Below are positions 1,552 to 28,389 of a stretch of 64,000 nucleotides of DNA, in pieces. The DNA is from Haliotis rufescens (Eukaryota): NCBI RefSeq assembly GCF_023055435.1, contig NW_025964112.1:42780001-42844000 (forward strand), read 5' to 3'. The number at the start of each line of letters is the position of its first letter. Within the stretch, counting starts at the first letter, position 1. Below the pieces are notes generated by a model. That model ran no database searches and was not told the origin of the DNA. It saw only the letters and a list, made by a program, of their open reading frames with translations. A program made the translations under genes and the position numbers.

Positions 1552-2151
1552 TTATCTGAACCAGAAGTCTGAACTCTTTCCTACGTCTGTCACGCGCCAA
1601 TGACGTCGTCTTTTAGTCACCTTATCGACAAATGCCATCACGCGGCGCCTCAGGAACACCTTCTGAGCTAGGTCAAGGTCGTTTGCTGACCTCCGATTTC
1701 GTTTCTTCCTTATTCGTTTCCGGAGGTCACCGGATTTGTCCATGTGACCTCGTGACTCCTCGGTCTCCGTGTCAGACTTATTGAACCATAGGTCTGGGTC
1801 AGATTTAGACCTACTGAGGTAGACGTAATTCCCATGCTGTGAGTTTGTGGACACAATTTCAGGGATGTTAGTGTAGCCAGGTTCAAGTTTAGATACATAT
1901 GATCCTTTAAATTCATGCTTTTGGTCACTAATTGATGATACGCTCTGCGACCGCTGGCGTACCTTGGTTGCCTCCGCTTGTTTACGATAAATTCTGTTCT
2001 GGGAACTTCCTGGTCTTGAACTGTGAGCATGATCAAGCTTAGTCGGCTTCGGGGTAGGATTCTTATTCTCCTGATCATCGTCATCAAATGGGGGCAGGTC
2101 AACGCTTTCAAAGGACGACTTGCTGCCGCCACGATCGTACGGGGTTTTGTT
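1552..2151 (-). CDS. Unknown microexon gene, terminal exon (NKTPYDRGGSKSSFESVDLPPFDDDD...RSKSDPDLWF...RKRIRKKRNRR...KSSDFWFR*)
   Basis: The frame of ORF 1552..1854 stays open up to the acceptor attgtatattgtccacag at 2152; 199 codons plus TAA; phase 0. Confidence 0.8.
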   Translation of the reverse strand, partial: NKTPYDRGGSKSSFESVDLPPFDDDDQENKNPTPKPTKLDHAHSSRPGSSQNRIYRKQAEATKVRQRSQSVSSISDQKHEFKGSYVSKLEPGYTNIPEIVSTNSQHGNYVYLSRSKSDPDLWFNKSDTETEESRGHMDKSGDLRKRIRKKRNRRSANDLDLAQKVFLRRRVMAFVDKVTKRRRHWRVTDVGKSSDFWFR

Positions 2152-3425
2152 CTGTGGACAATATACAATCTACCCGATACTAGAAAGATTCCAACAAGAG
2201 GAGATAACGTCTCCTGCTTCTGTTCAGTCGCCCGCGAGAGCAAATTATCGCACGGTAGTTTATGCATGTGTTGTGATTGTAATTAATATTCCTTGAGTTT
2301 TTTAACGTATGCTTTGAAATAACAACGTTACGTTTCGTCCAATGTGTGTGATATTATTTGAAAATGTTTTCGTGAGTGTTCGTGAATTTGGACAGTTTGT
2401 GACATACTATTACGCCATGTTGAAGTACAACAACTGAGTGTAGAGCGGATATGCTGTCTTGTGACTTGACCTACAGTACCCAACACTTGAAAAGAACAAC
2501 TATGATATTTCACCCTGGGAAACAATAGAGAGCAACAGCGTACATTAAGGAGTCCTTGACTTTTCAACTTGATTTGAAACTATAGACGTGGATACCAATC
2601 AGTAACACTGTACAGCCATCCTATAACTGGTCTAATTACAATGTCGATACTATCACAATTTCGTTTTCCCATGGGAATATGTGTTTGAGAACAGCCCCTA
2701 CGGATGGAGACATCTGTTAACCTGGTGCTATTGTTTGTAAAGGTTACACATGAACTACTTTATGGTCTGACAACGAGTTTTAATCATATATTGTTGTTGT
2801 ATCCCTGGGAGAAATACATTATTTACTGCCATGGCAATACAGGGGATCATAATATCTGTTTAATTGTAATAGCAACCCAGCACCATGGAAAGCACTTGCA
2901 ATCTATATGACTAATGATTACATTAAGGTGTAGCCCCGGGTTGCAAGTTAACGATCGAGGACACAACATAGCCCTGACACTTAAAAGCCAAAGGAAGATG
3001 AGTGTGCAGTGAGAACAAAACGTTTAGTTTAATCAAGTAATTACTATATATAAAAAATGATCATTGAAGCACTGTAGATATTGGAAAACGTCTCACACAT
3101 GTATTCACAGAGAATTGTCTTCAGAAAGGATGGATATCAACATTTATCATTTTTTTCATTTGAAGAATCAATTATATATCAATTAAATCTAATAATGATT
3201 ATTTTTATAAATATGAATTGGCATAAAAAATTTTTTTTTTATTAAACGAGTTGAATTATTTGCATAGAATTAATGTCAATTTGACGAGAATATATGTAAC
3301 CATTGGCATTTGTCAGAAGAAGACGTGACACAGGCGCTCAGTACACCAGTGAGATAGAGCTATACACAGGGTGCTATAATATAGCATACAAAGAGGTATG
3401 CATAGATAGTTGGTATGTGTCATAC

Positions 3426-3464
3426 CTTATCGTTATAATCAGAAGCAGAAGGTTCTTTGCTTGG
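3426..3464 (-). CDS. Microexon, 39 nt (PSKEPSASDYNDK)
   Basis: attgaattacag| ... aag|gtatga, phase 0-0. Confidence 0.7.
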
Positions 3465-3822
3465 CTGTAATTCAATATACAATTATAGAAATCAAAATCT
3501 TGGCCCAAAATGAACATAACATATTTCTCAACACATCAATTAAATAGTACCTCCTCGCTTACATACTCTCAATGTATATATAAATGTAAGTATATATTTC
3601 ACATGCGTTATTCACAAGATGAAAAGACGAACTGTTTAGTACATTAGTGGTCGACAAAGAAGAACAAACATGCTATTTACATTACCAGTCCTTGAACATA
3701 AAATGTTTAAACACAAACGTATATATATGTGTTTGTCAGTGGTGATACACAGAGGTTTTAAAGATTAGAGAGTCACATTTTGGAACAGAGGTCTTGGTTG
3801 TAACAGAAGGTACATGTCATAC

Positions 3823-3861
3823 CTGGTATTTTTTAGCCTTTCTAGATTGTGGACGAGAAGG
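3823..3861 (-). CDS. Microexon, 39 nt (PSRPQSRKAKKYQ)
   Basis: atttgttgttccag| ... cag|gtatga, phase 0-0. Confidence 0.75.
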
Positions 3862-4763
3862 CTGGAACAACAAATATTCAATATGAGTGAGTGAGTTTGG
3901 TTTTACACCGCTTTTCAGCAATATTTCAGAAATATATCCCCGTTGGGATCACAGGAAAGGTCTGAACACACCCAACCCTGGTTTACAACGTGACGAGCGA
4001 ACACTTTCACCACTGGGCTACTCCAAAACCCCTATTAAATTTGAAATACTACCGCATTCATATGTTTATACAAATTGTCACATTTCATTTGGTAGGATTA
4101 TCAAAAAGTACTGATTATATTTAAATAGTATACATTGTAAATAGTATTGTGAGCATGGCGTCTTATATGGTTACATAATGCGAAACGTGGATTAATGTTA
4201 CGAGGCATTTTTACAGAATCGACTTAATATAGATAATAATCAAAACTTGTGATAATAATGTGGTGATGAAGTGATGATGTGGATATGAAGGAGCGAATGC
4301 ATATTCCATATGATAATGCTCTCGCGGGCGTAAACACATTGTTACATACATTATTAACATTTGTAAAAATGGTTGTAGAGACACATTTCATAATGATAAT
4401 GTACTATCTTAAGGAGAGAGAGTTACGACACACTTGATAATGTATAGAAGAAATGCAATTTGTGAAAAGCAACATTCATTTAAATTTTATCTAAATTTTT
4501 ATTTCATTTCTGCTGTTTTCAGATTCAAACGTCTTTAAATTACCATAGGAATCAAATACCCAGATCTGCATACAAAATAAATCGCAATGCAAATTTTATA
4601 CATATAAGAAGTTTCGCTTGCAATGCGTTACATTCTATACCATGGTAATTTATACCTGCTCTTAAATCGCCAAATAATGTATAGAAACAATTAATATTCC
4701 TAGATAATAAAACTACCAACATAATATGCATGCATGTTGCAAAATGTAAAATATACAATTGAT

Positions 4764-5203
4764 ATAAGGGTAACGCTATTTTTCAGGGCATTATCATTTG
4801 CAGAAGCCCGAGGTCTTCCATTGACGGCCCGACGAAGGAGGGCAGTTGAAAAGACCGAGGGCTTCTGCAAATGATAATGCCCTGAAAAATAGCGTTACCC
4901 TTATTATAGCTAAAATGGATGGAATTTGTTATCAAATAAAAAACCCAACAATATCGGTTTTGAAACATTTACTGCAATCAACATGAATGCCACTGGCCCA
5001 CTTATAAAAATGAAAACGTCAAAGAACAAACCAGATGACGGCACTATTCAACGTGACGTCACCTATCCCTATCCTATGACGTCACCTTACAACGGGCGTG
5101 ATAATGGCCCGTCGTCAAGCAATATGAGGGCATTATCAAAATTACAGAGGCCCCATCATTTTTGATAACGGTTTAATGATAATTCTATCCTTTTTTGCTA
5201 TAA
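4764..5203. mobile_element. Non-autonomous element with two side-by-side inverted-repeat pairs
   Basis: Perfect 46-bp arms 4764-4809/4859-4904, then an imperfect pair 4906-4920/5187-5201. Confidence 0.65.
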
Positions 5204-5636
5204 ATACTAATAGTACATTCGTAAAGGTTCTGGTAAATATAAACTACATTATAATACACGCCGTGCTGTTAAGAAGATGGTCATAGCACAATGACTCAAA
5301 AACAACAAAAATCATCTCCTTTTATCAAAGGAATAAAATATATTTTCTGTAAACTGTCAATTTCTAAAGCATAATATATCGTATGAACTATAATATATCA
5401 TTTGTTATTATAAAATGCTTCATAAACGGATCCGTTTTATTTAAGAGGGTAAAAGCAAGTTTTGCTTTTGTATCCTGCAGCATATGTTGGGGTAAACACA
5501 TTTACGTGATGCACAAGACTTTCCTCTGAACACAATTACTTGTAACATGCTTTGTGCTATATGGGGATTTGGTGTTAAGGCGTATTGAATAATCACTGCA
5601 GAGAAGTGGTATATACTAAAGTGGGTATATACTTAC

Positions 5637-5669
5637 CCTGTTAGACTGGGGTGGGGTTCTTTGTGGTGT
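5637..5669 (-). CDS. Microexon, 33 nt (TPQRTPPQSNR)
   Basis: ttataatttcag| ... |gtaagt, phase 0-0; near-paralog of the 6410 microexon. Confidence 0.8.
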
Positions 5670-5714
5670 CTGAAATTATAACGGGTTTGTATATACAAAG
5701 CATCAATGTCAGAG

Positions 5715-5985
5715 ACCCGTTAAGATCCGGGGTAGAATAGGTCTTCAGCAACCCATGCTTGCCGTAAAAGGCGACTATGCTTGTCGTTTGAGGCGACTAA
5801 CGGGATCGGGTGGTCAGGCTCGCTGACTTGGTTGATGCATGTCATCGTATCCCAATTGCGTGGATCGATGCTCATGATGGGATCACTGGATTGTCTGGTC
5901 CAGACTCGATTATTTACAGACCGCCGTCAAATAGCTGGAATAATGCTGAGTGCGGCGTTAAAAAACAAACAAACTAACAAACAAA
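5715..5985 (+). mobile_element. Family C short retroelement without a tRNA head
   Basis: Starts ACCCGT(T/G)AAGATCC, ends (AAAC)n, about 15-bp TSD CATCA(AT/GC)GTCAGAGA. Confidence 0.88.
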
Positions 5986-6409
5986 CATCAGCGTCAGAGA
6001 ATATTTGATTATCTTGCGAAAAAGTTTCCATTGAGTGTTTAAGGCAAAACAGCGTGACAATTAAATGAATGGATCGCCAAATATCAGTGATGACACCAGG
6101 TGTTCGCGAAAAGGGTAAGCATGTCTGCTCTACCGGTAGCACCCGCCTTTTAAACAATTTGCAAAGAATGTGAATACAGGATAAAAAACAAACTTTGTTT
6201 GTATTATTATGAAAAAAATCTACAATGACTTAAAAAGAATCATGTTGTAATCGACCGAATGAAATTTAAATACAAAAACCAAAAAGTCCTTCGAGCGCCT
6301 TTATAGAGACGCTTTTCGGGTAATACTTGCCTTAAAATATCAATAGAGCAATTATAAATACATCATGATGTATGTTTTTTTTAATGTAATGAAGAAAGCA
6401 TATACTCAC

Positions 6410-6442
6410 TTTGTTGGCTTGTGGGGATTGTCGTTGTGGTGT
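6410..6442 (-). CDS. Microexon, 33 nt (TPQRQSPQANK)
   Basis: tttcgttttcgttccag| ... |gtgagt, phase 0-0. Confidence 0.8.
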
Positions 6443-6736
6443 CTGGAACGAAAACGAAACACATCTCATTGTATACTCGCATTAGTGACTATGTGAGGTA
6501 GATTTGACGCCGCGTTTGACAATATTTCAGTTGTAATAGCGTGTCCGAGTATTGGGATCATTCAAAGTGACGTCAACACCAACATAAGTACAAACAAACA
6601 TCTTAACCGGTGTTCATATGGGATTCGATCTAAAAAAAGATCGGTTCCTGGCACGACCATGATATACAACTATACAACACCATCCGTATCCATGTATGTA
6701 TTTACGACTTGTATAAGTGTCTATAGCTATAAGTAA

Positions 6737-7185
6737 CCGCCTCCGTGGTCGTGTGGAGAGAGCATCTGCCCGGAGAAAGAAAGGTCGGTGGTTCGATTCC
6801 CTGGCCACGTGATTCCAAAAGAGGTTAACAGATGGTACCCTGCTGGCGTTCTGCACTAAGGGGACAAAACAGGGACTTAGTTTTTTGTGGACCGCCTCCG
6901 TGGTAGAGCGTCCGCCCGGAGAGCGGAAGGTCCGGGGTTCGATCCCCGGCCGCGTCACGCGCCATTAAAAGATGGTACTTGTTGTTACTCTGTCTGGCGC
7001 TCGGCATTAAGTGGCTTAAACAAGGACTGGTCGGCTCGGAGTCAGTATACTGTGTTTGAGTGGGGTATCCATGTTAAACTGCGGCATTGTTTCTCAATGG
7101 GCTAGCACTATAAAACCGGCATCCGTCCGGACTAGTATAAGCGTCGCTATATAAGTGAAATATTTTTTAATGCGATGTTAAAGTC
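6737..7185 (+). mobile_element. Two tandem family B SINEs (truncated about 6737-6880, then about 6890-7185)
   Basis: Two successive accgcctccgtgg heads with GGTTCGA B boxes. Confidence 0.85.
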
Positions 7186-7310
7186 TGTTAAATGATATCT
7201 AGTTTTAGTTCAGTTGACTAAAATATACTTTTATAAATAAACTTTTGTGATATAACTAATAACAACCAATGAATGTGAGAAGAATAAAATAAACATCCGT
7301 TTAAACTTAC

Positions 7311-7346
7311 ACTGTTGGAATTGCTCGGCCTCCTGGAATTCGATGG
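7311..7346 (-). CDS. Microexon, 36 nt (PSNSRRPSNSNS)
   Basis: ttctgatttacag| ... |gtaagt, phase 0-0, open. Confidence 0.75.
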
Positions 7347-7589
7347 CTGTAAATCAGAATATATGTGATGTAAAAATGACGTCTATCAGTTAGTAACAAC
7401 ATATATTTACAGTGTCACTAGCTACCTCGGTGTTGCTAGAGCAACTGTAATGAAATATATATGTGTAGATATTAATTTACTTTGTGAAAGTGATAAGCAT
7501 ATTATCATGCACCACAGGCACTCTTGTATCCATGGCAATGTATCAACGGACAAAAATAAATTCAAGACAGTTATATAAGTCAAATACTA

Positions 7590-7649
7590 TGAGGTGAGAT
7601 GAGGTGAAATGGGACGTTTTAAGTCGCGTCCAAGATTATTGCACTTAAG

Positions 7650-7692
<43 letters not shown>

Positions 7693-7935
7693 CTTGTACT
7701 AGCCCGGACTGATACCGATTTATAGTGCTAGCCGTCTGCGATACCATGCCGCAGTTTAACATGAATACCCCACTTAGACACCGACTCCGACCTGTCCGTG
7801 TTTTAGCTCAATAATGCCGAGCGCCAGGCAGGGTAACAACAAGTACAACGTCTTTTGGTATGACGCGGCCGGGGATCGAACCCGGACGTTCCGCTCTACG
7901 GGTGGAAGCTCTGCCAGGAGACCACGGAGGCGGTC
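7590..7935 (-). mobile_element. Family B SINE with expanded (GT)n; a further fragment at about 8030-8105
   Basis: Reverse complement of family B. Confidence 0.85.
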
Positions 7936-8687
7936 TTCAAGTGGGTGGATACCACTTTGACCACATGTACACATGTATGGGCTATAGTGTTGCAACCACA
8001 TTGGGGTCGTCAAAAACATAAGGATCAGTCCTTGTGTTATCCCTTAATACCCATCGCCAGTCAGGGTAACAACAAGTACCATCTTTTAACGTCTTTTTGT
8101 ACCACCTGGCACATGCTGTATCCAGTCGACCGCGGAGCCAAATACCCCGAGGTATCAACATGCACACTATCCTAACAAGATTATCCCAGGAACGGGTCTT
8201 TCTTTTATCAATGTGTGTTTTGCTATTTTAACTGATATTTCGTACATGTGTCTTTGAGTGTCCTAATCTAAATACAAGGGGAGTCATATCTCTTTCTATA
8301 ATCTGACAAATCCGGAGCGCCGTCGGTCCTCATTAAGTTCAACTGCATATACCAAATGTTCTCTTCATGTGGACTTGGACCTTAACTGCTATGGCTCGTG
8401 TATTAGTAAGTGAGTGTGTAAATTTGATTTGACGACAACATTTCAGTTATATCGCGGCGTGTTATACAAAACCCAAGTGATGAATATCTTAGGCTTTCAT
8501 CACTTTGGTGAAACGAACGAGCATGGGTATGGGGCTGACAAAACCAGAAACATAATCGGGATGAACCGGTATTCGAACCATCAATCATAGGTTTCTGGCG
8601 TGCCAAAGGGACGCAACTCTGCAAGGGAATTGCGGCACCTTAGACGACTGGGCCACCCGTGACCTCCAAGATAGTCGAAATACATAC

Positions 8688-8717
8688 CCTGTTTGACTGC
8701 TGTGACCTGGGTGGTGT
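8688..8717 (-). CDS. Microexon, 30 nt (TPPRSQQSNR)
   Basis: ttgtttgttttattgcag| ... |gtatgt, phase 0-0; similar to the microexons at 6410 and 5637. Confidence 0.8.
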
Positions 8718-10718
8718 CTGCAATAAAACAAACAAAATGACGTTGAAATGACCATGTTTTTTTCAATAATCGTCAATCCACTAAGTTTAGTGATTCAGGA
8801 AGGTTCAACGCCACTTTGAACATTATTTCAGTTTTATCACTGCGTGTCAGCTTGATCATTGATGAATACTCAAAGTGATATTCATCACTTTGGTTAAACA
8901 TTCGAGAACAGGTATGATTCTGACGTCGAAACTTGGTTTAAACCTTGGATCATAGGTTTCTTGAACACATCTGTGTACCTCGGAATCGTAGAATGGACTG
9001 CTTTTAGCAGATTTCTTTTTAATGAATATGGAAATCTCTTTGTCGCTTTTGTTTAGACGACTGGGCCACCCGTGCCGCTCCGAACAATGTTTGATAGAGT
9101 CTACTACTCACTCTGAAGACTCTCTTGTTCTCATTAAAGGCTTGGTGTAAACACTCGATTTATAAATATTTGTATTACCAGTGTTGTTACTATCGTGAGT
9201 TTCCTGAGTGAACAAATAATAAATATCCATTTGTAATACTACTTTCAAAGCAATCTGATATTGATAATAAGTCTATCCTGAGAGATGTGTATTTTTATCT
9301 TATCCAACTGGGGACACAGATATGCTGACGGAAACATGGCTGTCACCTGCCATAGGAAAGCTGAAATACGTGACCTCCTTATAATAATATTCTTACTGCA
9401 ATAACTCATGCATTTCTTGTTATTCATAGTGAATAGTTTTATTTAAAACATGGGAATACTCTCTCATCAAGTATTTATATTCCCTTTTGAAATCAAAACT
9501 TTGGCCTACCTTGTTAAGCTTCTATTGACTATTGGACGGCCATGGTTTACGTTGCGGTCTGTCAAGCACATGCTCACATAAGTAATTTGAACACTCAGTT
9601 GATCATATCGATTCTTTTGGGATATAAATGAACAATAATTGTATATCATGGGGCCCACTTGTCTAAGACGCCGCAATTCCCTATGCACAGATGCGTCCCT
9701 TGGGCACGCCAGAAACCTATGATCGTGGGTTCGAATTCCGGATTGTGTTTCTAAGTTTTTCAGCACCCTACAAGTTGCTTGTGGGTTTCACCAAAATTAT
9801 AAACGCCTTCCGGCCATAAAATATCAAGAATACTGTTAAACATGGCGTTAAACCCAACTCACTCACTTACTCACTCTCTCAGATACTCAAATGGTTGTTA
9901 AACAAAAATAACATCAGATTTAATTCATTTTCAGAAATCCAGTAATATGTGCTCTGAGAAAATGTTTTTATGTTCATGTTTCATGTTTTTCTTGCCTTTT
10001 CAGTTGCCCACCCTTGCTGATCCTTGCGAACACCTGGTGTCATCACTGCTTTTCTGTGCTCCATTCATTTAACTTTCACCTATATTTTGCCTTGTACGTC
10101 ATATTGAATCTGTTTTGTTTTCTGTTTTATTCATTTTTACGATTAACTTTTTGATGTGATCCATTCGATTTCACTATTTCACAATGATCAACCAATGTAA
10201 TTAATCAAAGTATGTTCGAAGATAATTCTATTTGTGCATATAATAAAGATCTGTGCCACACCTGCGAAAATTGGGTTTACGCCTAACCCACAAATGATTT
10301 TCTTGTTATATGTTCATTATGTGAAGAGTGAGTGAGTGAGCGACATCATGGCGGGGTCACAGAAAGCGGCTTCAGTAATTGAGCTCAAGTGGGGAATTGA
10401 ACACGACCCTTCGTTTTGACGGGCGAACGGCTAATTTGTTCATCGCTTGCCTCTCAAAACTACTTACAATTTATCAATAGAGTAATAGTTAGCGTTATCT
10501 CAAGATCAAACGCATCAAAGTGTATGTATCAGGAGTAGAATTTCCGATTTTTTTAAAACAAATACAACCGTAACACTGAGAAAGAACAACTTCATTGGGA
10601 TCACAGCAGTTCTCATAACTAATAATAAAACGGTAAAATGTATCGAGATCAATATTTCTGATGGTTGCCCTACATACACGGGGACCTCATAGCGGGAATG
10701 TAGAGTCAAATACATTAC

Positions 10719-10754
10719 CGCGTCTCCAGAAGGCTGTGGAGATGTCCCAGGCGA
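10719..10754 (-). CDS. Microexon, 36 nt (SPGTSPQPSGDA)
   Basis: tttattttctatttcag| ... |gtaatg, phase 0-0, open. Confidence 0.75.
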
Positions 10755-11551: not shown

Positions 11552-11875
11552 GCCTCCGTGGTCTATTAATAGCGCGTCCGCCCGGAGAGCGGAAGGGACG
11601 GGGTTCGATCCCAAAAGACGTCAAAAGAGGGTACTTGTTGTTACCCTGTCTGGCGCTCGGCAGTAAGGGGCTTAAGCAATGACAGGTCGGTTCGGAGTCG
11701 ATATACTGTGTCTGAGTGGGGTATTCATGTTAAACTGCGACATGGTATCTCAGTGGGCTAGCACTATAAATCGGCATCAGTCCGGACTAGTACAAGCAGC
11801 CACAGACAAACACGTGCATGCACGTCGCTATATAAGCGCAATAATCTTGGACGCGCCGTTAAACCCCATCTCAAC
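11552..11875 (+). mobile_element. Family B SINE
   Basis: Family B head, core and tail. Confidence 0.85.
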
Positions 11876-14259: not shown

Positions 14260-14428
14260 GGGGTGCTGGGGTAGCCTAGTGGCTAAAGCGTTTGCCCGTT
14301 ACGCTGAAGACCCGGGTTCGATTCCCGACATGGGTACAATGTGTGAAGCCCATTTCTGGTGTCCCCCGCCGTGATGTTGCTTGAATATTGCTAAAAAAAA
14401 GGCGTAAAATCCAACTCACTCACTCACT
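14260..14428 (+). mobile_element. Family A SINE
   Basis: Same sequence; TSD CATCCA(T/C)ATGTA. Confidence 0.9.
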
Positions 14429-15580: not shown

Positions 15581-15622
15581 TTCTCTTTGTTTTCTTATTC
15601 TACGAGAGTGTTTCCACCCGAG
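15581..15622 (-). CDS. Microexon, 42 nt (LGWKHSRRIRKQRE)
   Basis: atattgcag| ... |gtaagg, phase 0-0, open. Confidence 0.7.
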
Positions 15623-15756
15623 CTGCAATATATCATATTCACCCAGCCATCAAACCATTAAGGCGGATATATCGTCATGTGGCCGAACTCCCACATATTG
15701 TCTCCTCAAACACAATACACAAAAACAAACTGACATACACAACAACCTTTACTTAC

Positions 15757-15965
15757 TTCTTTATGTCTAAACGCCATGATTCGTAGATAGAGGCTGTTGT
15801 CTCGTTGTGCAGGGGGCTTCTTCCCTGGCGAACCCATATCCTTTTGGCGCAGTCGCTTGTGGATGAGACGTCTGGCAGCTCGATACTCCGAGCCGTAGAT
15901 TCTGTCGAACACCACGGACAGGCGGTCGATAGCGTTCTGCTGACTGCTGTCACCGCCGCTGCTTT
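15757..15965 (-). CDS. Unknown microexon gene, exon 2 (ESSGGDSSQQNAIDRLSVVFDRIYGSEYRAARRLIHKRLRQKDMGSPGKKPPAQRDNSLYLRIMAFRHKE)
   Basis: Acceptor ctctctcttttctccaatag, donor GTAAGT, 209 nt, phase 1 to 0, open, GC-richer than the flanks. Confidence 0.8.
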
Positions 15966-16960
15966 CTATTGGAGAAAAGAGAGAGATGCTGGTATTGTTC
16001 TTTGAGAAACGGTATGTTTGCAGTTCGCAAATCTAGGAGGATTATATCCATATCGCCTTTGGGACAGATCACTCGCGCATAAAAGACGTTTCCTACGTCT
16101 GCATAAAAAGAAACGTCTCTCCGGCACATTTATCTCAAACGTTAGGCGGGAGGGAGTGCTTTTTTAATATATATATTTTTTAAACAAAGGTGATTAAGCT
16201 GGAACCTTCTTTTCCCAAAAGAATACCGAGAAAACACAAATGGACACACGGCGAACTTGGCATTTAATACAATATCAGTTGACTGCAAAGTTTGCTTCAT
16301 CTGAGGCGGGGAATTTGAAAGGTAGTTTTATTAAGAATTAAAATGACGCCCAGGATTTAAAGTGAAGCGCAGATGCCCGATAAACATTTTGAGTGATTAT
16401 CATAAACATGTAAAACATAAATATTAACTTTTCCTACTTCAATGCATTTCAGTGAGTACAAAGTATGACAAAATAAATTTGTCTTTAGGTTGTCTGATAT
16501 AAGAAACACGATCCACGATAAATCGATATGATCAATGGCTATAGAGGAAGGAATGAATTATGGATTTGCTCCACACATGTACGTATTATATTCATTACTA
16601 ATAATGCCATACATTGGCTCTGTTCTAGGTTGGAATTCATTAAATGTACACGTAGTGTTATCTAGTATACGAATCATGATCAATCACGAAGTCAAATGTG
16701 ATTGTTCATACTTGACAACGTAGATAATTATGTATTCTACACTGTTTCACCTGCAATTACCTCAACAATGACATCCTGTTTAAGTGGTAATTTAACCTAG
16801 TGTGAACATCTGGCATTGTTATCGTGAGTGATAAATGGGGATTGCCTGAACAATTAACATACCGTGGACCCCTTGGGATTTAGGTAGAATATGTCCGATG
16901 TACCTATATGTATGTTTGTGGGGACCAAACACAAGTATTCGGTGGTTACAAGGTGAAATA

Positions 16961-19163: not shown

Positions 19164-20070
19164 GAATTCACCATCTAGTCACTCAAACTTGATAACACTA
19201 ACACCTTGGCTTTATTCACCATCTAGTCACTCAAACTTGATAACACTAACACCTTGGCTTTATTCACCATCTAGTTACTCAAACTTGATAACACTAACAC
19301 CTTGGCTTTATTCACCATCTAGTCACTCAAACTTGATAACACTAACACCTTGGCTTTATTCACCATCTAGTTGCTCAAACTTGATAACACTAACACCTTG
19401 GCTTTATTCGCCATCTAGTAACTCAAACTTGATAACACTAACACCTTGGCTTTATTCATTATCTAGTCACTCAAACTTGATAACACTAACACCTTGGCTT
19501 TATTCACCATCTAGTCACTCAAACTTGATAACACTAACACCTTGGCTTTATTCACCATCTAGTTACTCAAACTTGATAACACTAACACCTTGGCTTTATT
19601 CACCATCTAGTTACTCAAACTTGATAACACTAACACCTTGGCTTTATTCACCATCTAGTCACTCAAACTTGATAACACTAACACCTTGGCTTTATTCACC
19701 ATCTAGTTACTCAAACTTGATAACACTAACACCTTGGCTTTATTCACCATCTAGTTACTCAAACTTGATAACACTAACACCTTGGCTTTATTCACCATCT
19801 AGTCACTCAAACTTGATAACACTTACACCTTGGCTTTATTCACCATCTAGTTACTCAAACTTGATAACACTAACACCTTGGCTTTATTCACCATCTAGTT
19901 GCTCAAACTTGATAACACTAACACCTTGGCTTTATTCACCATCTAGTTACTCAAACTTGATAACACTAACGATACATTGGCTCTGTTCACCATCTAATCA
20001 GTCAAACATGATGACACTAACAATATCTTGGCTTCATTCACCATCTACTCGGTCAAACATGATGACACTA
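19164..20070. repeat. 48-bp minisatellite, about 19 copies
   Basis: Unit TATTCACCATCTAGT(C/T)ACTCAAACTTGATAACACTAACACCTTGGCTT. Confidence 0.97.
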
Positions 20071-20280
20071 AGGATATATTTACCGAAACTAATCATAACT
20101 ACAAGCAGCAAGGCAACCTTGTTTTAATTTAAACATTTTGTCCCATGAAAGGAGTTGGGCACAAAAAATAAATGTATGTATGTATATTGCTTTCAGATTT
20201 TTATAATGTAATGAAATATCAACAAGAAAACAAATTAAAAAGGATAGTTATATGATAAGTGCCTTCATTTACATGATAAT

Positions 20281-20508
20281 CGCGTTCAAAATTATTGCAC
20301 TTATATAGTGACGTGCATACACGTGTGTGTGGACTAGGCTGCTTGTACTAGTCCGGACTTTTAGCATGAATACCCCACTCAGACACAGAATACCTGTCTC
20401 CTAGCCGACGAGTACCAAGTACCATTATTTGCGTCTTTTGCCAGGGAATAGAAACACCGACTTTACGCTCTCCGGACAGACTCTATCCACTACACCACGG
20501 AGGCGGTC
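20281..20508 (-). mobile_element. Family B SINE, degraded
   Basis: ccacggaggcggtc head and tgaataccccactcagacac body on the plus strand. Confidence 0.75.
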
Positions 20509-22204
20509 GCGTCAAGCACGAATCTACATAAACAACATAGTGCTTCTTCCTGTATCGACGTATTGACGTTCAACCCCAGTGCCATGACACGGTATTGTAT
20601 TTACAAGTCTGTTCTTTGTGAACTGTTGAAAATGGACGCAGTGCTGATAAATCTGAGTTGATGGCCTACTCGTTCAGGTGGTGTTATCGTAAATTCCCAG
20701 TAACAGGAGCCTGATGAATAAACTCCACGCGATTGGAATACAATCTTTGAATGGGAGAGGCGCCCGGACTGCAGCACCTGGGAGTTGCACGTCCACGTCG
20801 GTGTTTACTGCATTGTAAAACGAATGTGTATGTGTTGCAATCTGATTGGTTGAACGTGAGGTTGGATTCTGCGCATAAATAACTTAAAGCATTTTGATAT
20901 TTAACCTTGACTAACATCTAGTCTCTGAAATAAACATGGCTAAAAACAGTTGTTAAATTATAGTTATAAAATATGATCAAAAGGAGCCAAGAGACTTAAT
21001 TTTCAGATTTTTTAATACTGCTGTTATCTAGACTTGCCAAATATTATAGACTTACATGGACTTTATTGTATATATGTGTCTGTATGACAGATTATATCTA
21101 ATCCAGCTTTGGCAAAAAACGTGTCATTTGGCTTCGTGGAATTGATATCCCATTAATTAAGTATTAAGTTTGATCATTATGTATCAGAACAACCACTGAT
21201 TAATGTTTGTTCCACATTGTCAGGTGTGTTCAGTTATCACGGAAGCATATGACGACATCCATTGTATGATGACGTCAAATCATTCCCCCCACCCCCACCC
21301 CCACCCCCACCCCCGACAAGCATGGGTTGCTGAAGATCAATTCTAATACGGATCCTCACGGGAGTATTTATACTTAATAATATAATAATAAATATGTAAG
21401 ATTATCAAGAAGACGGTCTGTACAGATTGTCATAGTCATTTTTTAAAATAATTTCTGATCACGTTCATAAATACATTGAGTCTACCTACACTCAGATTAA
21501 AATAATTTATTAACGCATTCCTTAAACACCGAAAATACATGATGACAAGTTTGATACATAATTCTTAAGTATAACCACGGTCTACAGATTTACGCGACCT
21601 ATGCTTATGCGATATGACATAATTTCGTGGGACGCTCACAGGGCAAAATCGATTATTGGTAAATATTTATGCCGATATTCTTATTGATGTGTGTACACAA
21701 TATTAACAGGACGTCGTTGCGTTTTGCTCAGTTAGGAATAATTGATTATCATTTCCATTACGTCATAAAAGATATTACCAAGACAGAAACGAAACCCCGG
21801 AAATTAACACAGTCTGCTTATCTCATAAAGATTGTGGGTAATTTACCGTGTGTTATTGGACTGGGTGCGTTCACAGGCCCGGGGTAGGGTGACCGTGAAC
21901 AAGCGGTGTACGTGTTTGTGTTAGTTTTAATGCGTCGGTACCAGGGTCAATGTAAGTGGTCGTCTTGGAGCTAGTGTTAGTGTCAGTACACACGCTAATG
22001 TCAGGGTTGGCGCAAGTGAGCGTGAGTGTGAGTATAAACGTGAGTGTGAGTGTGAGTGTGAGTATAAACGTGAGTGTGAGTGCGAGTGTAAATAAATACG
22101 ACAAAATCATTTCTGTAATTTACGAAATCGGTCGCTAAAAGCCGAGACCAATGTAAAATATATATATCTATATCATAAGCACGTCTCCATGAATCACTAT
22201 CAAA

Positions 22205-22600
22205 TAGTGATGATACCAGTTGTTCGCGAAAATTTGAGCGTATCCTGCCCACCCGATGACACTTGTCATAAACACATGAAAAGGCAAGTCAATTGTTCAC
22301 CCGAACAAACATGGGAACATATGGTACAAGAATAGGAAATTAGAATCAAGAATAGGGAAATCATTTTTGTCACAGATACGTCAAATTTGGAAATGACCTT
22401 CGCTACAGGTTTTGAAAGCTTTGCTGGGGCATTGAATATGATCACTCTTAAATCGAACATCTTTTGAGCAAGAGTCGTGCATGCTCGATTGTATATCAAA
22501 ATTCGCGAAATGTAGACATCAAAGACTGGAGTTTCTGGAATATCGCCAAAATAAGAATTAGTATAAGTGTCTGTGTCAGTTTTTGGCGTCCTTTCGCCAT
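22205..22600 (-). mobile_element. Penelope-like RT fragment plus 3' motif
   Basis: GDIPETPVFDVYISRILIYNRAC. Confidence 0.6.
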
Positions 22601-23242
22601 GGTTAATATAAGTATCTGTCAGTTCAGAACCTCAACAACAACTCGACCATCTTTGCAATTGGCCTATGTATATTGCCAATGAGCTGAATTTGGCTGCATC
22701 CCCCGTCCCACAAACACACACCACCCCCTTCTCTCTGTCTCTCAGTCTCGTTGCCAACAGATATTTTCCAAATCTTTTCATGTTTTGAATCAAGGTGCTC
22801 ACGTGATTTGATGCATTTCGCGATGTAAGACCCGTTTTATCACAATATAGGTCTTGATTATAGATCAGATCGTCCTGACTGGTCACCGCCATTTTGTTTG
22901 AAGCAAATGTGATACGAGATTTGGAATCTGATTGGTCCATAGGAGAGGCTTAGACGGGACATAACTCGTAATAGCCACTGGTGGCGCTGCGATCGAGCCC
23001 ATGCATTCCAGCCTAGTTCGGCAAGGGTGGAAACTGGATTTTCAAAGTCCGTTAACTCCCTTGCCTCGGGAAGATGCGTTAAACCCAACTTACTCACTGT
23101 TTCTTTCTATCTATCTCTCTCGCTCTATCTATCTGTCTCTCCCCTCTCCCTCTGCTTGTGTGTCTCTGTCTATGTCTCACAGTCTCCAAAGCTGTGTCTA
23201 TGTGTCTCTGTCTGTCTCTCTCCCCTCTCCTCTGTCTGTGTG

Positions 23243-23288
<46 letters not shown>

Positions 23289-24875
23289 ATCATCCGTTTC
23301 TCTGCCCTATTTTCTGATTTCATGACATATCTTTTAAATAAGTTAAAATTATTAATGTTAATAACATCGACAATATATACAACGTGGTTGTCCCATAATA
23401 ATGCGGTACAAGCTTCACCATGAACCCAAAGCAAGAACTTACAGCAAAATACACCTTTAAAGCTGATGAATGAGATGTCATCCCCGTCAGCCAATCAATA
23501 AGCTTCAATGACATAAGTGACCAATCAATAGGTTGCCTGCGAGAGCGGGTCGGTCAACAACATAGCTTCCGAATCCATACACAACCATCAAGTCAGCCTT
23601 GCCATCGATTTATCCAGCCCTTTCACAAATTAGAAAATACAGTCGAGTGGATAAATTCTATATCAAACAAGGCCCTCTCTTCTGAAACAAGTTCTGTTGA
23701 GTTCACCCAATATAGGCGGCACGTGTTGTTATTTTAACAGTTCAAAGACCGACACAGTTAGGTGATTGTTGACACAATGACACAAAACACTCAAGTGTGT
23801 TGGCAACGCTGTTTGGCGATTGTCAGTGGAAATGGGAATACAATGGTCTCAACACGATAACACCGCAAACAATGTCTAGGACGTGCACACGCTAGTGGGG
23901 TGAAATATCCAATTGATAAAGTCTAAATAATTACTAATATGAATAACTTGTATAACTAAACATTTACAGGATTACTTCCCTTAGCACGCTTTTGTGACGG
24001 GTGCCACGGAGGACAGGATACGTTCACCTTTTCGAGATTACCTGTATCAATGTTATTTGATACTGATTCATAAACAACGCATGGTTATGTAATTGTCGGA
24101 ATTGTACAGTGAACTCTGACAGTGTTCTTTGCAGAGATATGATTACGGAAAGCTGTTTTCCCTTTAATTTGATACCATAAGAATAGATAAGTGGGGTCAT
24201 AGTGTGTATCTCAGTCTTAGTCTGACTGTCAAGAAGGCGACTAAATGCTATCAGACAGTCACATATGCTTCTCATGGATGGGTTGGAACATCGTTTAAAC
24301 TTACGTTGAGCTGGTTGTGTAAGGTTACGTTCGCTATTGGCCATTGGTTGTGGTAGCTATATGTTATACACTGCTGAAAGTGTCTTCAATCTATGTCAAC
24401 CCACTCCCTGTGACTTCATACTTCCCCAGTCTGTGATTTCGGTGTGCGCAGGTGGCCCAGTCGTAAGAGGCACCGGTATTTGCTTTACATAGGCGTATCA
24501 GAATACGACGAGCTGAGTTTTTACAGCCGGGTTCTTATTATTTTAATTTTGTCAGCACCTACGATCTGCACCACGTTAAGCTGTTAAAAAAGTCGTTAAA
24601 ACACTTATTCACTCTCCCTTATACTGATGGGCAAAGGAAAGTATACAGAGTTTGCATTTTATGTAATTGAAAATTGAAAGAACAGTCTGATATTGTCTAT
24701 TTAAGCATCTCTCATTCCTGCAACAATTTGTAAAGTAATCTGAGGCTTGGCAAGTTTGTGTAAAACATATTGATTCAATGAACACTGGGGTAAGAAAAGA
24801 ATTTGCAACCACATGACCCCGATCACGTTGCAAATGAAAATTTGTGCCGAAAAGAAAAGCAAATTTATAGCTAAG

Positions 24876-25019
24876 AGTGAGTGAGTGTAGTTTTACGCCG
24901 CTTTTAGCAATATTCCAGCAATATCACGGCTGGGTACACCAGAAATAGGCTTCACACATTGTTCCCATGTCGGGAATCGAACCAGGGAACGCTTTAACCA
25001 CTAGGCTACCCGACCGCCG
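24876..25019 (-). mobile_element. Family A SINE
   Basis: Reverse complement with a small deletion. Confidence 0.85.
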
Positions 25020-25777
25020 CTCAAAGATAAGATGTCTCAGCAGTTGTGTTTTATACGATTTTTTAAAATAAATTTTAAACGTTTTATTCAAATTATATTC
25101 TAAAATATAAAACCATGTAGAAGTTTTCCTTGAGTCCTTGAGTTCTGACTTAGATTCAGTTCAGTTATTTTTTTAATATAATGGCGCAACTTAAAAATCA
25201 AACATACGATAAAATCAGAGCTATGATTTCTTTTGTCCCTCATACCTGTGTCCTAGTTAGTTTTCATTCACGTTGATCTGACATGATCTGATCCAACAGA
25301 AAGAGGCACTTACTTGAAATTGACTCATTCACTATCTATATTATTTAGCCTGGACCTCCAGACGCGGACGTTGTCCCCAATCCCCACCGCCGCTATTATC
25401 TCCCGTTGCCCCGCAGACACAAGTCACACAGGTGAATTAATGAAATTATCGACAAATCCCCAGTGCGTTATACAAATTATTTCCCTTTGCATATGAGATG
25501 GGAAGTGGATGTTAGGTGGGATGATTAAACGATGATTTATTGGAAATTATAGTCGGCTGTTTGAGAGATGCCGCCACGACCGGGGCCATTGTGGGAAGCT
25601 TCAGATGACACTAAAGAGCTGGGGGTCAACAGGGTCAATGGCAAGGTCACGTACTGTAAATATCGGCGAACCAAAATCTTTGAAGTTAATACCTTTGCTT
25701 AAACTTTGAACTAGCATTACTGACTCAATTTCCTTACTGGTGGATTATGGGAATACCTCATGCACAGTTGAAGTGAT

Positions 25778-25941
25778 TGAGTGAGTGAGGATGGTTTTAC
25801 GCCGTTGTTAGCAATATTCCAGCAATATCACGAAGGGGGACACCAGAAATGAGCTTCAAACATTGTACCCATGTCGGGAATCGAACCCGGGTCTTCGGCG
25901 TGACGAGCAAACGCTTTAACCACTCGGCTACCCGACCTCCA
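25778..25941 (-). mobile_element. Family A SINE
   Basis: Reverse complement; TSD CAGTT(G/T)AAGTGA. Confidence 0.9.
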
Positions 25942-26076
25942 CCAGTTTAAGTGAGTTTTGATAGTGTGGTGGCTTCACAATTCAGCTAGTTGTAAAAGAA
26001 ATATGAATCGAATCCAAAAACACGAAACGATATGTCTAAAAGACTATTCATTGTGACTTTATATCATCCCACTTAC

Positions 26077-26225
26077 ACGCCGCCTCTGCGATTTAGTGGT
26101 TGAACGTCCGACCGGAGAGTGGAAGGTCCGTGGTTCGATCCCCGACCGCGTCATACCAAAAGACGTTATAAGCGCAATACTCTTGGAGGCGACGTTAAAC
26201 CCCATTTGACCTCATCTAACCTCAC
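26077..26225 (+). mobile_element. Family B SINE, head joined to tail
   Basis: Head through accaaaagacgtta fused directly to the tail. Confidence 0.75.
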
Positions 26226-26773
26226 ACACTGTTAATGTGGGGACGTAAGTACGAATGATATACCCCTGGAGATTTATGTTATAACTACGTCCGCGTTTTG
26301 ATTTATTTTCTTGCTTCCCATCACAAAATGGGTAAAATGTGCGCACACCATTTCTGCTATTCCCGCTGTGATATGGCTGGAATATTGTTGTAAGCAGCGT
26401 AAAATCCAACTCACTCACACATTCAAAGAGTGATCACAAAATACACCACTTAGAAAAATAAGTGAAATGAAACATTCAACGGATTACAATAAGAACAGTA
26501 ACTTGACTTTAAACATTATTTTCCTAATAAAGTTCAGTTTTAAAATGTCTCAGTCCCTTTCAGTTGTCGGCTCATAATATGACTAACATGTTTACTGAAC
26601 AGTAGAAGGGTGTTCAAAACCGTAGTGATGGTTAACTTAATGCACACCTAAAAACCGAATATAGATATGAAGGCAAAGAGTAAATGAGTTTGGATTACCG
26701 CTGCTATGAACAGTATTTCAGTTATATCGCGGTGTGTCAGGTGAATATGAGGGAAAAAACCTCCCCACCCTCC

Positions 26774-26917
26774 NNNNNNNNNNNNNNNNNNNNNNNNNNN
26801 NNNNNNNNNNNNNNNNNNNNNNNNNNNNNNNNNNNNNNNNNNNNNNNNNNNNNNNNNNNNNNNNNNNNNNNNNNNNNNNNNNNNNNNNNNNNNNNNNNNN
26901 NNNNNNNNNNNNNNNNN
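26774..26917. other. Assembly gap
   Basis: Run of N. Confidence 1.
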
Positions 26918-28379
26918 CGAGGTCCTTCTGTACACATCAATGTAACTGACTAGTGATATGGGGGTAATTTTCGATAGGGGGAATTCGGTTGTTTCGGAGT
27001 TTCGAGTTTTGCCACTCTTATTATGGGCGATATTTGATTGACTTTTCAGAAACAAAATGAATAATTATGTTTAATGCGAAATGACAATGCCTTTATAAAA
27101 GTGCGGAAACGCAACGTATGATATAGTTTTTATGAAACTTAAAGTTAGTAAAGTACACATTCTGGTACATTTTTAAGTGGAGTCCGATCGCGTATTCGAA
27201 CCCACACTCTCAGAGTGAGGCACCCAATCCCGGTTGTGGGTTCGAATCCCGGATGGGATTCCACCCCCAAAAGTACTGGAATTTGTTCTTAACTTAGAAA
27301 GTGTAACCCCAACTTCAACGTATGTTACTTTTAGTATAATTAATTTTACATAAATAGTCATGCTGAGAATGTAGCTCCAGTATCAATCATCAACGTTGCA
27401 TCTTTCCTTTTCAACAAGCAGGTGCTGGCATGAGGTTCGAAAATGCAGTAGCTGTATTGCCAAAGGAAATGGTATAAATTCCAAAAAGTTCTTCAATTTT
27501 AATTCAGATTTCATTGCAGAGTAGGTTGAGCCTTTACTTGAATTTGAAACTAAGGTTGTTAGTTACAACACGGCAGACAGTTTTATCGAATCGTTTGCCA
27601 ATATTTCAAAGCTTTCAAAGTGTAAAAATCTAAATTTACAGCTTCCACAATGGACCCTCACGTCTCGTCCTTTAAACAAGTCGATAATATCAAGGCCATA
27701 CCTATACATATGGTCGGTATAACAAAAGAGAACATGATTATGTTATGTCACATCGGCTCTGTGATGTTTACAGTCTCCTATCAAGTTCTGTCGGAAGTAA
27801 TGGCAAATGATAATTATTAGTCTGATATGAAAGACAACCCTGTGTTGCTACATGTTATTGCCGCTAGACAAACAGTCTTCGATGATAGACATCCCACTTC
27901 AAACTCTCGGGTATCAACAGGACTCACCGTTATTGATATCATTCTCGAATAATTGTGTTTGCCTCAGGCTTCAGAGGAAGAACATGATGCACACGTGTGC
28001 TGGGTTTCCCACACATAACTTATCCTTATCAAATTGAATTACACGCTTATAGAAGTGTGTTCAGACATTAGATAGAAATTATCAAGATAAAAACATGCAA
28101 AATATCCTTTGGTATTATTAGGATAAGTACCATAGAGAGTGTTGGCTTTAAGAGGGTGATCATGCTTCTTGTCAAGAAAACCTGAATCAAGGTCTTAAAA
28201 GGAACCTAGAATTCTAGTATTTAGTGACCATAATATTATCTTCCCTTACCTGTTATAAGAATATTTTCATTGTCTGTGACCACTCTGTTTAATTGCCGAA
28301 ATATGTCAGTGTATCTTTGGATATGTTTATTAGAATTTAAGATCAACATGCGAATGTATAAAAACTCCTTGTAACTTAC

Positions 28380-28389
28380 CTCCGGCCAT
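28380..28389 (-). CDS. Unknown microexon gene, probable start exon (ATG GCC GGA G; M-A-G-)
   Basis: Minus strand reads ATGGCCGGAG|GTAAGT, a strong phase-1 donor matching the phase-1 acceptor at 15965. There is an in-frame upstream stop, and a candidate acceptor tgtgtttttcag gives an exon top at 28488. Confidence 0.55.

What the first reader, a model, noticed from the sequence alone, without database searches (positions are those of the whole stretch)
1552..28389. Hidden orphan gene with an array of eight symmetric phase-0 microexons
Seen: eight minus-strand segments of 42, 36, 30, 36, 33, 33, 39 and 39 nt. Each has a YAG acceptor and a GT donor, is a multiple of 3, and is stop-free in phase 0. 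They lie between a 209-nt exon ending in phase 0 and a 600-nt terminal exon starting in phase 0. Joined, they give about 368 aa, with helical-looking basic ends around a P/S/Q/R/N-rich linker. The ORF track does not recover this structure and I recognise no family. Known: runs of short symmetric exons allow combinatorial in-frame skipping, as in schistosome micro-exon genes and neural microexon programs. Inference: a linker whose length and composition are set by splicing (up to 2^8 combinations), but in an apparently intracellular protein with no signal peptide or TM.
Basis: partly seen in the sequence, partly recalled or inferred. Interest (0 to 1): 0.78.

Follow-up and report, generated by a model that had tools for sequence, protein, structure and literature searches.

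The report
Abalone gene with seven real microexons
This is a real red-abalone gene for a mostly disordered, snail-specific protein whose linker is built from seven tiny in-frame exons, but the gene and those exons are already in the public annotation, so it is neither hidden nor a true orphan.

Summary
The structure is largely real. Seven of the eight proposed minus-strand microexons (m2-m8, 30-39 nt), the 209-nt exon and the 10-nt start are exact pieces of four RefSeq Haliotis rufescens isoforms (XP_046357604.2...605.2...606.2...608.2). Four junctions (m4-m5-m6-m7-m8) are cut at exactly the predicted bases in contigs of 3 of 4 public runs.

The 42-nt m1 is in none of the six Haliotis protein models retrieved. 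It stays a plausible but untested candidate.

The "terminal" 600-nt exon is not terminal in the annotation. RefSeq leaves it at an internal donor (after 1963) or skips it, and goes on to a 63-nt exon (152-90) and a last exon outside the window. RefSeq omits 1962-1621, yet that stretch holds the family's most conserved motifs.

The protein has relatives in Pomacea, Littorina, Nucella and Bulinus, all uncharacterised and without a Pfam family.

Annotated splicing varies m4, m7+m8 and the large exon. That is modular, not a shown 2^8 combinatorial system.

The N gap lies in intron 1 and touches no coding frame. The scan's earlier notes hold nothing on this gene.

The parts
28380..28389 (-). Coding end of exon 1: ATG plus 7 nt, donor GTAAGT at 28379-28374, phase 1
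   Evidence: sequence. With the first 2 nt of the next exon it gives MAGE, the N-terminus of P0001, P0016, P0036 and P0034. An in-frame stop lies 21 codons upstream with no ATG between.
26774..26917 (.). Assembly gap (144 N) inside intron 1
   Evidence: It lies between the exon-1 donor (28379) and the acceptor at 15966. No annotated coding exon is missing. It was not filled or looked up.
15757..15965 (-). 209-nt exon (phase 1 to 0) encoding the conserved N-terminal three-helix module
   Evidence: an exact substring of the four H. rufescens isoforms, residues 5-73; 15 invariant columns across 7 gastropod sequences; helices 5-23, 25-43 and 56-68, with pLDDT 84-92 over residues 11-40.
15581..15622 (-). 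m1, a 42-nt candidate cassette exon. Unverified.
   Evidence: YAG/GT, no stop; its splice-signal score ranks 4th of 137 candidates. It is absent from all six Haliotis models. No reads were laid here.
10719..10754 (-). m2, 36-nt microexon
   Evidence: Exact substring of P0001, P0016, P0036 and P0034.
8688..8717 (-). m3, 30-nt microexon (TPPR site)
   Evidence: Exact substring of the four H. rufescens isoforms and of H. cracherodii P0015.
7311..7346 (-). m4, 36-nt cassette microexon (RRPS site). Skipped in isoforms X2 and X4.
   Evidence: present in P0001 and P0036, absent in P0016 and P0034. Joint 6442>7311 in X1, X2 and X3.
6410..6442 (-). m5, 33-nt microexon (TPQR site)
   Evidence: Joints 5669>6410 and 6442>7311 in X1, X2 and X3.
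5637..5669 (-). m6, 33-nt microexon (TPQR site)
   Evidence: Joints 3861>5637 and 5669>6410 in X1, X2 and X3.
3823..3861 (-). m7, 39-nt microexon. Present in X3 and X4, absent in X1 and X2.
   Evidence: Joints 3464>3823 and 3861>5637 in X1, X2 and X3.
3426..3464 (-). m8, 39-nt microexon. Present in X3 and X4, absent in X1 and X2. In the annotation it is joined to the 63-nt exon, not to the large exon.
   Evidence: P0036 and P0034: m8 is followed directly by the 63-nt exon's peptide. Joint 3464>3823.
1963..2151 (-). First 189 nt of the large exon (motif A: acidic SFxSVD...PTPxPT), ending at the internal donor AAG|GTACGC used by RefSeq X1 and X2
   Evidence: P0001 residues 130-192. (match at G000:C334:42781939-42782154). 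(donor letters).
1621..1962 (-). Rest of the large exon, 114 codons, not in any Haliotis protein retrieved. It holds the family-invariant LxPxYxxxP, the basic cluster RKRIRKKR and the LAQKV..RRV helix. A predicted distal donor AAG|GTGACT follows 1621.
   Evidence: P0003 matches query residues 73-174 at E 2.1e-11; P0002 matches 6-179 at 2.0e-16. (invariant L89 P91 Y93 P97 L161 A162 Q163 V171). (helix 161-187, pLDDT 91-95). (the donor is inferred from Pomacea and Littorina).
1552..1620 (-).
   Evidence: Other gastropod transcripts likewise read V... past the equivalent point. Contigs of X1 and X2 have a length that fits a colinear run through here (inference).
90..152 (-). 63-nt symmetric phase-0 exon (motif D, ...TTARDVYVE...). 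It is followed by a last coding exon outside the window (G000:C334:42778732-42779385 matches P0001 residues 213-430).

Best explanation
The region is most of one single-copy red-abalone gene. RefSeq calls it 'nucleolar protein dao-5-like' or 'pollen-specific LRR extensin-like', names that reflect only its low-complexity composition. It encodes a mostly disordered protein of a family so far found only in gastropods.

The gene order is: exon 1, a 209-nt exon (N-terminal three-helix module), seven verified symmetric phase-0 microexons of 30-39 nt (the linker), a large 531-nt phase-0 exon, a 63-nt exon and a last exon beyond the window. The large exon carries short conserved motifs, a basic NLS-like cluster and one amphipathic helix.

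Every exon after the 209-nt one starts and ends in phase 0, so any of them can be dropped without breaking the frame. The annotation uses this in four ways:
- m4 is included or skipped.
- m7+m8 are included or skipped.
- The large exon is cut short at an internal donor.
- The large exon is skipped entirely.

Inferred, not shown:
- A form that keeps the whole large exon also exists in abalone, either spliced after 1621 or read through to the stop at 1552. That segment is conserved, and Pomacea has both the long and the short form.
- The microexons act as cassettes of phosphorylation sites. m3, m5 and m6 each carry one [ST]Px[KR] site and m4 carries RRPS. Splicing would then set the length and site number of a regulatory linker and decide whether the NLS-like cluster and binding helix are present.
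For: - Exon peptides are exact, ordered substrings of XP_046357604.2, XP_046357605.2, XP_046357606.2 and XP_046357608.2.
- The own-genome search with P0001 found 4 of 4 matches on the same contig and strand. The last exon was 100% identical, and the large-exon peptide matched one place only.
- Four exact GT..AG junctions appear in 3 of 4 runs from 3 studies and 2 organism labels.
- Family: 14 hits at E<=0.001. Named members are from Pomacea, Nucella, Bulinus and Littorina.
- Motifs are conserved.
- Pomacea isoform P0039 leaves the homologous exon at an internal donor, while P0009 keeps it whole.
- Disorder: the Atlas model of P0009 has pLDDT 0.41. The large-exon model has mean pLDDT 59, with only helix 161-187 confident.
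- m3, m5 and m6 encode related peptides, and the m3/m6 DNA score has z=4.2.
Against: - RefSeq isoforms are pipeline models and I did not see their read support.
- The runs are only guessed to be RNA. The clean intron-sized joints argue that they are. Contigs drop rare forms, so neither skipping nor constitutive use can be measured.
- No retrieved Haliotis protein contains 1962-1621. Its expression rests on contigs whose letters I could not see. X1 and X2 look unspliced and could be pre-mRNA.
- Junctions m8>large exon and 1621>152 are unseen.
- Exon duplication is weakly supported. The m5/m6 DNA score has z=1.3 and the introns show no similarity.
- The phospho-cassette and NLS readings are motif-level inference only.
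- Restriction to gastropods may reflect the poor detectability of disordered proteins.
Confidence: 0.85

Rival explanations
1. One reading: an unannotated orphan gene of about 368 aa, made of exon 1, the 209-nt exon, m1-m8 and the 600-nt terminal exon. Its eight microexons would be skipped freely in up to 2^8 combinations to tune linker length.
For: - All exons after the 209-nt one are phase 0.
- m4 and m7+m8 are optional in the annotation.
- The read-through end has parallels in transcript-derived proteins of other gastropods, for example the P0004 cluster with 11 members.
- m1 has splice signals as good as the verified exons.
Against: - The gene is annotated with four isoforms and has gastropod relatives.
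- No model or contig seen joins m8 to the large exon.
- m1 is in 0 of 6 Haliotis models.
- Only four combinations are on record.
- None of the 15 joints listed skips a microexon, though 41 more were not shown.
Confidence: 0.1
2. The microexons are constitutive. The isoform differences in RefSeq (m4 skipped, m7+m8 skipped, internal donor) would be prediction artefacts or rare splicing noise. The gene would then make essentially one protein.
For: In the three informative runs only the adjacent junctions m4-m5-m6-m7-m8 were listed. I could not inspect the evidence behind the RefSeq isoforms.
Against: - Models of three Haliotis species (H. rufescens X1 and X2, H. cracherodii P0015, H. asinina P0035) go from m6 straight into the large exon and use the same internal donor.
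- Pomacea is annotated with an analogous short and long pair.
- Contigs cannot show minor forms.
Confidence: 0.1
3. m1 (15622-15581) is a genuine, rarely used or tissue-specific cassette exon that the annotation pipelines missed.
For: Its leave-one-out splice-signal score of 15.2 ranks 4th of 137. It sits among the verified microexons, and the best other unverified candidate scores 10.6. It is in frame and stop-free. It lies only 134 nt after the 209-nt exon.
Against: - It is absent from 6 of 6 Haliotis models.
- Nothing like its peptide occurs at that position in Pomacea, Nucella or Littorina.
- The scoring matrix rests on only about ten sites.
- I have no read evidence.
Confidence: 0.3

Closest known systems
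RefSeq Haliotis rufescens isoforms X1-X4 (XP_046357604.2, XP_046357605.2, XP_046357606.2, XP_046357608.2)
   Same: The same gene. Exon 1, the 209-nt exon, m2-m8, the first 189 nt of the large exon, the 63-nt exon and the last exon match exactly.
   Different: The annotation lacks m1 and lacks 1962-1552. It therefore omits the family's most conserved motifs. Its product names are composition artefacts: no LisH or SRP40 domain, and no Pfam hit at all.
Pomacea canaliculata LOC112557716 (XP_025083499.1, with isoform P0039) and hypothetical proteins of Littorina saxatilis, Nucella lapillus and Bulinus truncatus
   Same: The same family. They share the N-terminal helical module, motif A, LxPAY motif B, the basic cluster, the LAQKV helix, motif D and the C-terminal IAAL.KLAD / SPEFQ..LD.FL end. 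Pomacea also has a short form that uses an internal donor in the homologous exon.
   Different: The linker sequences are unrelated. The internal donor sits 9 residues after motif A in Pomacea and 29 in Haliotis. It is therefore analogous, and not shown to be the same site.
Schistosome micro-exon genes (MEGs)
   Same: Runs of short symmetric exons separated by long introns, with isoforms made by exon skipping. I saw the starts of the abstracts of PMC10526429 and PMC10399815 in the listing.
   Different: MEG products are secreted, while this protein has no hydrophobic N-terminus. Microexons encode only 82 of 393 residues of isoform X3. There is no sequence relation.
Combinatorial mini-exon and short-exon linkers in intracellular proteins (troponin T 5' mini-exons, titin PEVK exons). 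Recalled, not checked here.
   Same: Short in-frame cassette exons encode a flexible charged or proline-rich segment of an intracellular protein, and splicing sets its length.
   Different: The families are unrelated. Combinatorial use is documented there and is not shown here.
Exon-phase symmetry in disordered regions (PMC3632108; only the search listing and start of abstract seen)
   Same: Symmetric exons encode intrinsically disordered modules.
   Different: That is a general statistical trend in human genes. This is one gastropod example.

Membership tests
RefSeq gene 'nucleolar protein dao-5-like' of Haliotis rufescens | Exon peptides identical to and colinear with the annotated proteins | tested here: met
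   the 209-nt exon, m2-m8, the 63-nt exon and the last exon are exact substrings in order; 100% identity for residues 213-430.
Unnamed gastropod protein family (Pomacea LOC112557716 and relatives) | Shared N-terminal module and motifs A, B and C with significant sequence similarity | tested here: met
   E 2.0e-16 to 7.2e-4 for 13 non-Haliotis hits; invariant columns in both modules.
Nopp140 / dao-5 nucleolar phosphoproteins | LisH N-terminus and SRP40 C-terminal domain (recalled definition), detectable with Pfam | tested here: not met
   There were 0 Pfam families for P0001, P0036, P0035, P0009, P0038 and P0039 at E<=0.1.
Schistosome micro-exon genes | Secreted product with a signal peptide | tested here: not met
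   the maximum 19-residue hydropathy is 0.07 in P0001 and P0036, and the N-terminus MAGESSGG is polar. The definition comes from the abstract starts.
Schistosome micro-exon genes | Short symmetric exons interspersed with long introns | tested here: met
   Seven exons of 30-39 nt, all multiples of 3 in phase 0, with introns of 358 to 4826 nt between m1/m2 and m8. They make up only about a fifth of the coding sequence.
SRRM4-type neural microexons | Length of about 27 nt or less, and a UGC element just upstream of the acceptor (recalled definition) | tested here: not met
   All are 30-42 nt. TGC directly before the AG is seen only at m3 (and at candidate m1), so at 1 of 7 verified acceptors (output).
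Combinatorially spliced cassette arrays | Several exons skipped independently of each other in transcripts | tested here: inconclusive
   Four annotated combinations: m4 in or out, crossed with {m7+m8, large exon skipped} or {no m7/m8, large exon cut short}. Contigs showed only adjacent junctions and cannot show rare forms.

The most novel reading that the evidence does not exclude
Splicing may work as a module selector in a gastropod-specific disordered scaffold.

The linker microexons would each add one kinase site: TPxR in m3, m5 and m6, and RRPS in m4. After m6 the transcript would choose between three paths:
- m7+m8;
- a short acidic module;
- the full conserved exon with an NLS-like cluster and a binding helix.

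The short/long choice in the large exon would be shared between abalone and apple snail, and so very old. It would toggle localisation or partner binding. The conserved long form is missing from all abalone annotations seen here.
Probability: 0.2. Interest if true: 0.5.

Novelty: new member of a known kind. Interest (0 to 1): 0.25.

Why it matters
The finding matters mainly as annotation hygiene.

It also recovered a conserved coding segment (1962-1621) that the abalone protein models retrieved here omit.
- That segment carries the motifs that define the family across gastropods. Isoform catalogues for this gene are therefore probably incomplete, and its automatic names are misleading.
- Biologically this is one more case of symmetric short exons encoding a disordered, probably phosphoregulated linker. 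It is useful as a clean example and is not a new principle.
- If the short/long choice in the large exon really is shared between abalone and Pomacea, it would be an anciently conserved alternative-splicing event in an uncharacterised mollusc protein. That would be worth a targeted experiment.

Tried and rejected
Searches that gave nothing:
- Pfam on the large-exon and 209-nt-exon peptides. The only hit was a sub-threshold BioW match, E 0.06, 13.3 bits against a cut-off of 25.
- Pfam on ten family proteins. The only hit was a sub-threshold Lamprin match in P0014.
- The word-index protein search with the large exon found nothing. Its 110-348 aa length window explains this.
- ESM Atlas with P0009: best feature score 0.78 and TM at most 0.20, which is no usable lead.
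- PDB profile search: one chance-level row, E 0.046.
- Foldseek of the N-terminal model against the PDB: 0 matches at E<=10.
- Rfam on 1-34000: only a tRNA-like SINE head, and no intronic snoRNA.

Ideas rejected or weakened:
- Recent tandem duplication of microexon-plus-intron units is rejected. The flanks show no similarity.
- The H. cracherodii model's PPSNNG-repeat N-terminus maps to a 21-nt minisatellite at 32.5-33.6 kb. It does not map to exon 1 or to the gap. I treat it as a doubtful alternative first exon.

Papers:
- No paper names these accessions. One search gave 4 hits for 'dao-5-like', none on Haliotis by title.
- One search was too broad to be useful.
- Supplements were not consulted.

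Full report
What is there.
The window is 64 kb with 40% G+C and two N gaps, 26774-26917 and 37874-38051. All features below are on the minus strand.
- I enumerated every segment of 24-60 nt that is preceded by YAG, followed by GT, a multiple of three and stop-free, between 15756 and 2152. There are 137. The rule by itself therefore proves nothing.
- I built a crude leave-one-out splice matrix from this gene's own verified sites. Six verified microexons and m1 take the top seven ranks of 137. m2 ranks 11th, and the best other unverified candidate scores 10.6 against 15.2 for m1.
- The 209-nt exon 15965-15757 is open in the frame that starts at 15963.
- The 600-nt segment 2151-1552 is an open frame of 199 codons plus TAA, behind a CAG acceptor.

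Transcript evidence.
- The look-up of sequencing runs listed 24 runs. Twenty hold the large exon, and none is on record as RNA. X1-X14 are guessed to be RNA.
- I laid X1, X2, X3 and X5 on 1952-7951.
- Contigs of X1, X2 and X3 carry joints 3464>3823, 3861>5637, 5669>6410 and 6442>7311. X5 does not. Each joint removes a CT..AC interval, which is GT..AG on the minus strand.
- These are exactly the m8-m7, m7-m6, m6-m5 and m5-m4 junctions. They also show that the three runs contain spliced RNA.
- None of the 15 listed joints skips a microexon. Another 41 were not shown, and contigs drop rare variants. This says nothing firm about skipping.
- m1, m2 and m3 and their junctions lay outside the laid stretch.

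Identity.
- The word-index search with the large exon was blank. Its length window excluded the real proteins.
- The exhaustive HMMER search found 14 proteins at E<=0.001.
- The best hit, P0001, is XP_046357604.2, 'nucleolar protein dao-5-like isoform X1' of Haliotis rufescens.
- Related records are X2 (P0016), X3 (P0036, named 'pollen-specific leucine-rich repeat extensin-like protein 1'), X4 (P0034), an H. cracherodii model (P0015) and an H. asinina model (P0035).
- I matched single-exon peptides to these proteins without joining anything:
  - X1 = MAGE + the 209-nt exon + m2-m6 + the first 63 codons of the large exon + a 63-nt exon + a last exon.
  - X2 = X1 without m4.
  - X3 = MAGE + the 209-nt exon + m2-m8 + the 63-nt exon + the last exon, with the large exon skipped.
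  - X4 = X3 without m4.
- m1 is in none of the six Haliotis models.
- The own-genome search placed P0001 in four pieces on the same contig and strand. The 63-nt exon is at window 152-90. The last exon is at G000:C334:42778732-42779385, which lies 616-1269 bases before the window starts, and is 100% identical.
- The large-exon peptide matches one place only in the 1.33-Gb assembly.
- The genome is therefore red abalone or something indistinguishable from it at this locus.

The gap.
- Exon 1 ends ATGGCCGGAG|GTAAGT at 28389-28380. Its last G plus the AA that opens the 209-nt exon gives the E of MAGE.
- An in-frame stop lies 21 codons upstream with no ATG between.
- The gap at 26774-26917 therefore sits in intron 1, and no annotated coding exon is unaccounted for.
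- I cannot say whether the assembly is continuous across the gap. I did not try to fill it.

- The large exon is not terminal in RefSeq. X1 and X2 leave it at AAG|GTACGC after 1963.
- The remainder, 1962-1621, contains the columns that are invariant across 13 family members: L89, P91, Y93, P97, L161, A162, Q163 and V171 of the exon's peptide.
- That remainder alone matches P0003 at E 2.1e-11 in a library of 1.84 billion sequences. It is conserved coding sequence.
- No Haliotis protein retrieved contains it.
- In Pomacea, isoform P0009 keeps the whole homologous exon and then continues into a segment like the abalone 63-nt exon. Isoform P0039 leaves the exon at an internal donor shortly after motif A. 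Littorina P0038 has the long form.
- By analogy, the abalone distal donor should be AAG|GTGACT after 1621, in phase 0.
One example is the P0004 cluster with 11 members.
- The contig table hints that such RNA exists in abalone:
  - X1 record 1 and X2 record 9 both extend 1827 letters left of 1952. That would reach about 125, which is 28 bases into the 63-nt exon, as expected for a colinear unspliced path.
  - X3 record 17 runs colinear from 2151 across the internal donor and has 351 more letters on that side. That is enough for all of 1962-1621.
  - X3 record 17 also has 30 letters beyond the acceptor, while X3 shows no contig in 2152-2951.
  - These are inferences from lengths. I could not see the letters, and holes in contig coverage prove nothing.

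Nature of the protein.
- There are no Pfam families, no PDB relative and no Atlas lead.
- 77% of P0001 residues are P, S, Q, R, N, K, E, D, G or T, and no hydrophobic stretch is present.
- AlphaFold models give a three-helix N-terminal module, with pLDDT 84-92 over residues 11-40.
- In the large exon they give one confident helix, residues 161-187 (the LAQKV...RRV motif), in an otherwise low-confidence chain.
- Foldseek found nothing for the N-terminal model.
- m3, m5 and m6 each encode one [ST]Px[KR] site. m4 encodes RRPS. The segment RefSeq omits holds the basic cluster RKRIRKKR.
- m3, m5 and m6 encode related peptides. The m3/m6 DNA score has z=4.2, the m5/m6 score has z=1.3, and the flanking introns are unrelated. 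This fits old exon duplication but does not prove it.
- The profile search found only gastropods: 8 proteins, named ones from Nucella, Pomacea and Littorina.

Mechanism.
- Shown: every exon after the 209-nt one is symmetric in phase 0. The annotation uses m4, m7+m8 and the large exon as optional modules.
- Inferred: the gene encodes a disordered scaffold. Splicing would set the length and kinase-site count of its linker. Splicing would also decide whether the NLS-like cluster and the conserved helix are present.
- The biochemical role is unknown. Nuclear localisation of the long form is my best guess, at low confidence.

Comparison with known systems.
- This works like other cassette-exon linkers. 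It is not a schistosome MEG: there is no signal peptide and only about a fifth of the coding sequence is in microexons. The MEG definition comes from the abstract starts.
- It is not an SRRM4-type neural microexon set, on size and on the UGC element. That definition is recalled.
- It is not a Nopp140/dao-5 relative.
- Troponin T and titin PEVK are recalled analogies.
- PMC3632108, on exon-phase symmetry and disorder, was seen only as a search listing.
- No paper on this gene was found.

Verdict.
- The gene is already annotated and belongs to an uncharacterised gastropod family.
- New points are modest: a conserved coding segment absent from the abalone models, an untested 42-nt candidate exon, and a possibly ancient short/long splice choice.
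- The scan's earlier notes contain other abalone microexon cases but none on this gene.

Noticed in passing
window 32507-33583: A 21-nt minisatellite of about 51 copies, open in several frames on both strands. The H. cracherodii RefSeq model (P0015) takes its PPSNNG-repeat N-terminus from the equivalent sequence. That is probably a doubtful alternative first exon.
   Followed up: partly
window 19166-20071: A 48-nt satellite with 18.8 copies and 95% matches, inside intron 1. It gives a spurious 321-aa plus-strand ORF.
   Followed up: no
window 5552-5951 (also 6752-7151 and 7552-7951): Intronic repeats that attract very many contigs in all four runs. The summed word depth reaches about 7x10^5, with many irregular joints.
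   Followed up: partly
window 6758-6800, 6904-6946, 11570-11612, 14284-14326: Four copies of a tRNA-like SINE head containing GGTTCGATCCC-type T-arm letters, in the introns. Rfam calls 14265-14336 a tRNA at 31.7 bits, just above the cut-off.
   Followed up: no
window 1962-1621: A coding segment conserved across gastropods but absent from every Haliotis protein model retrieved. This is probably an annotation gap in three abalone species.
   Followed up: partly
window 3438-3852 and 1952-3261: Contigs of X1 and X2 run colinear through the m8-m7 intron. In X1 a contig also runs from the large exon into the intron above it. This points to retained introns or pre-mRNA in these libraries.
   Followed up: no
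window 37874-38051: A second assembly gap (178 N), outside the gene. It was not examined.
   Followed up: no
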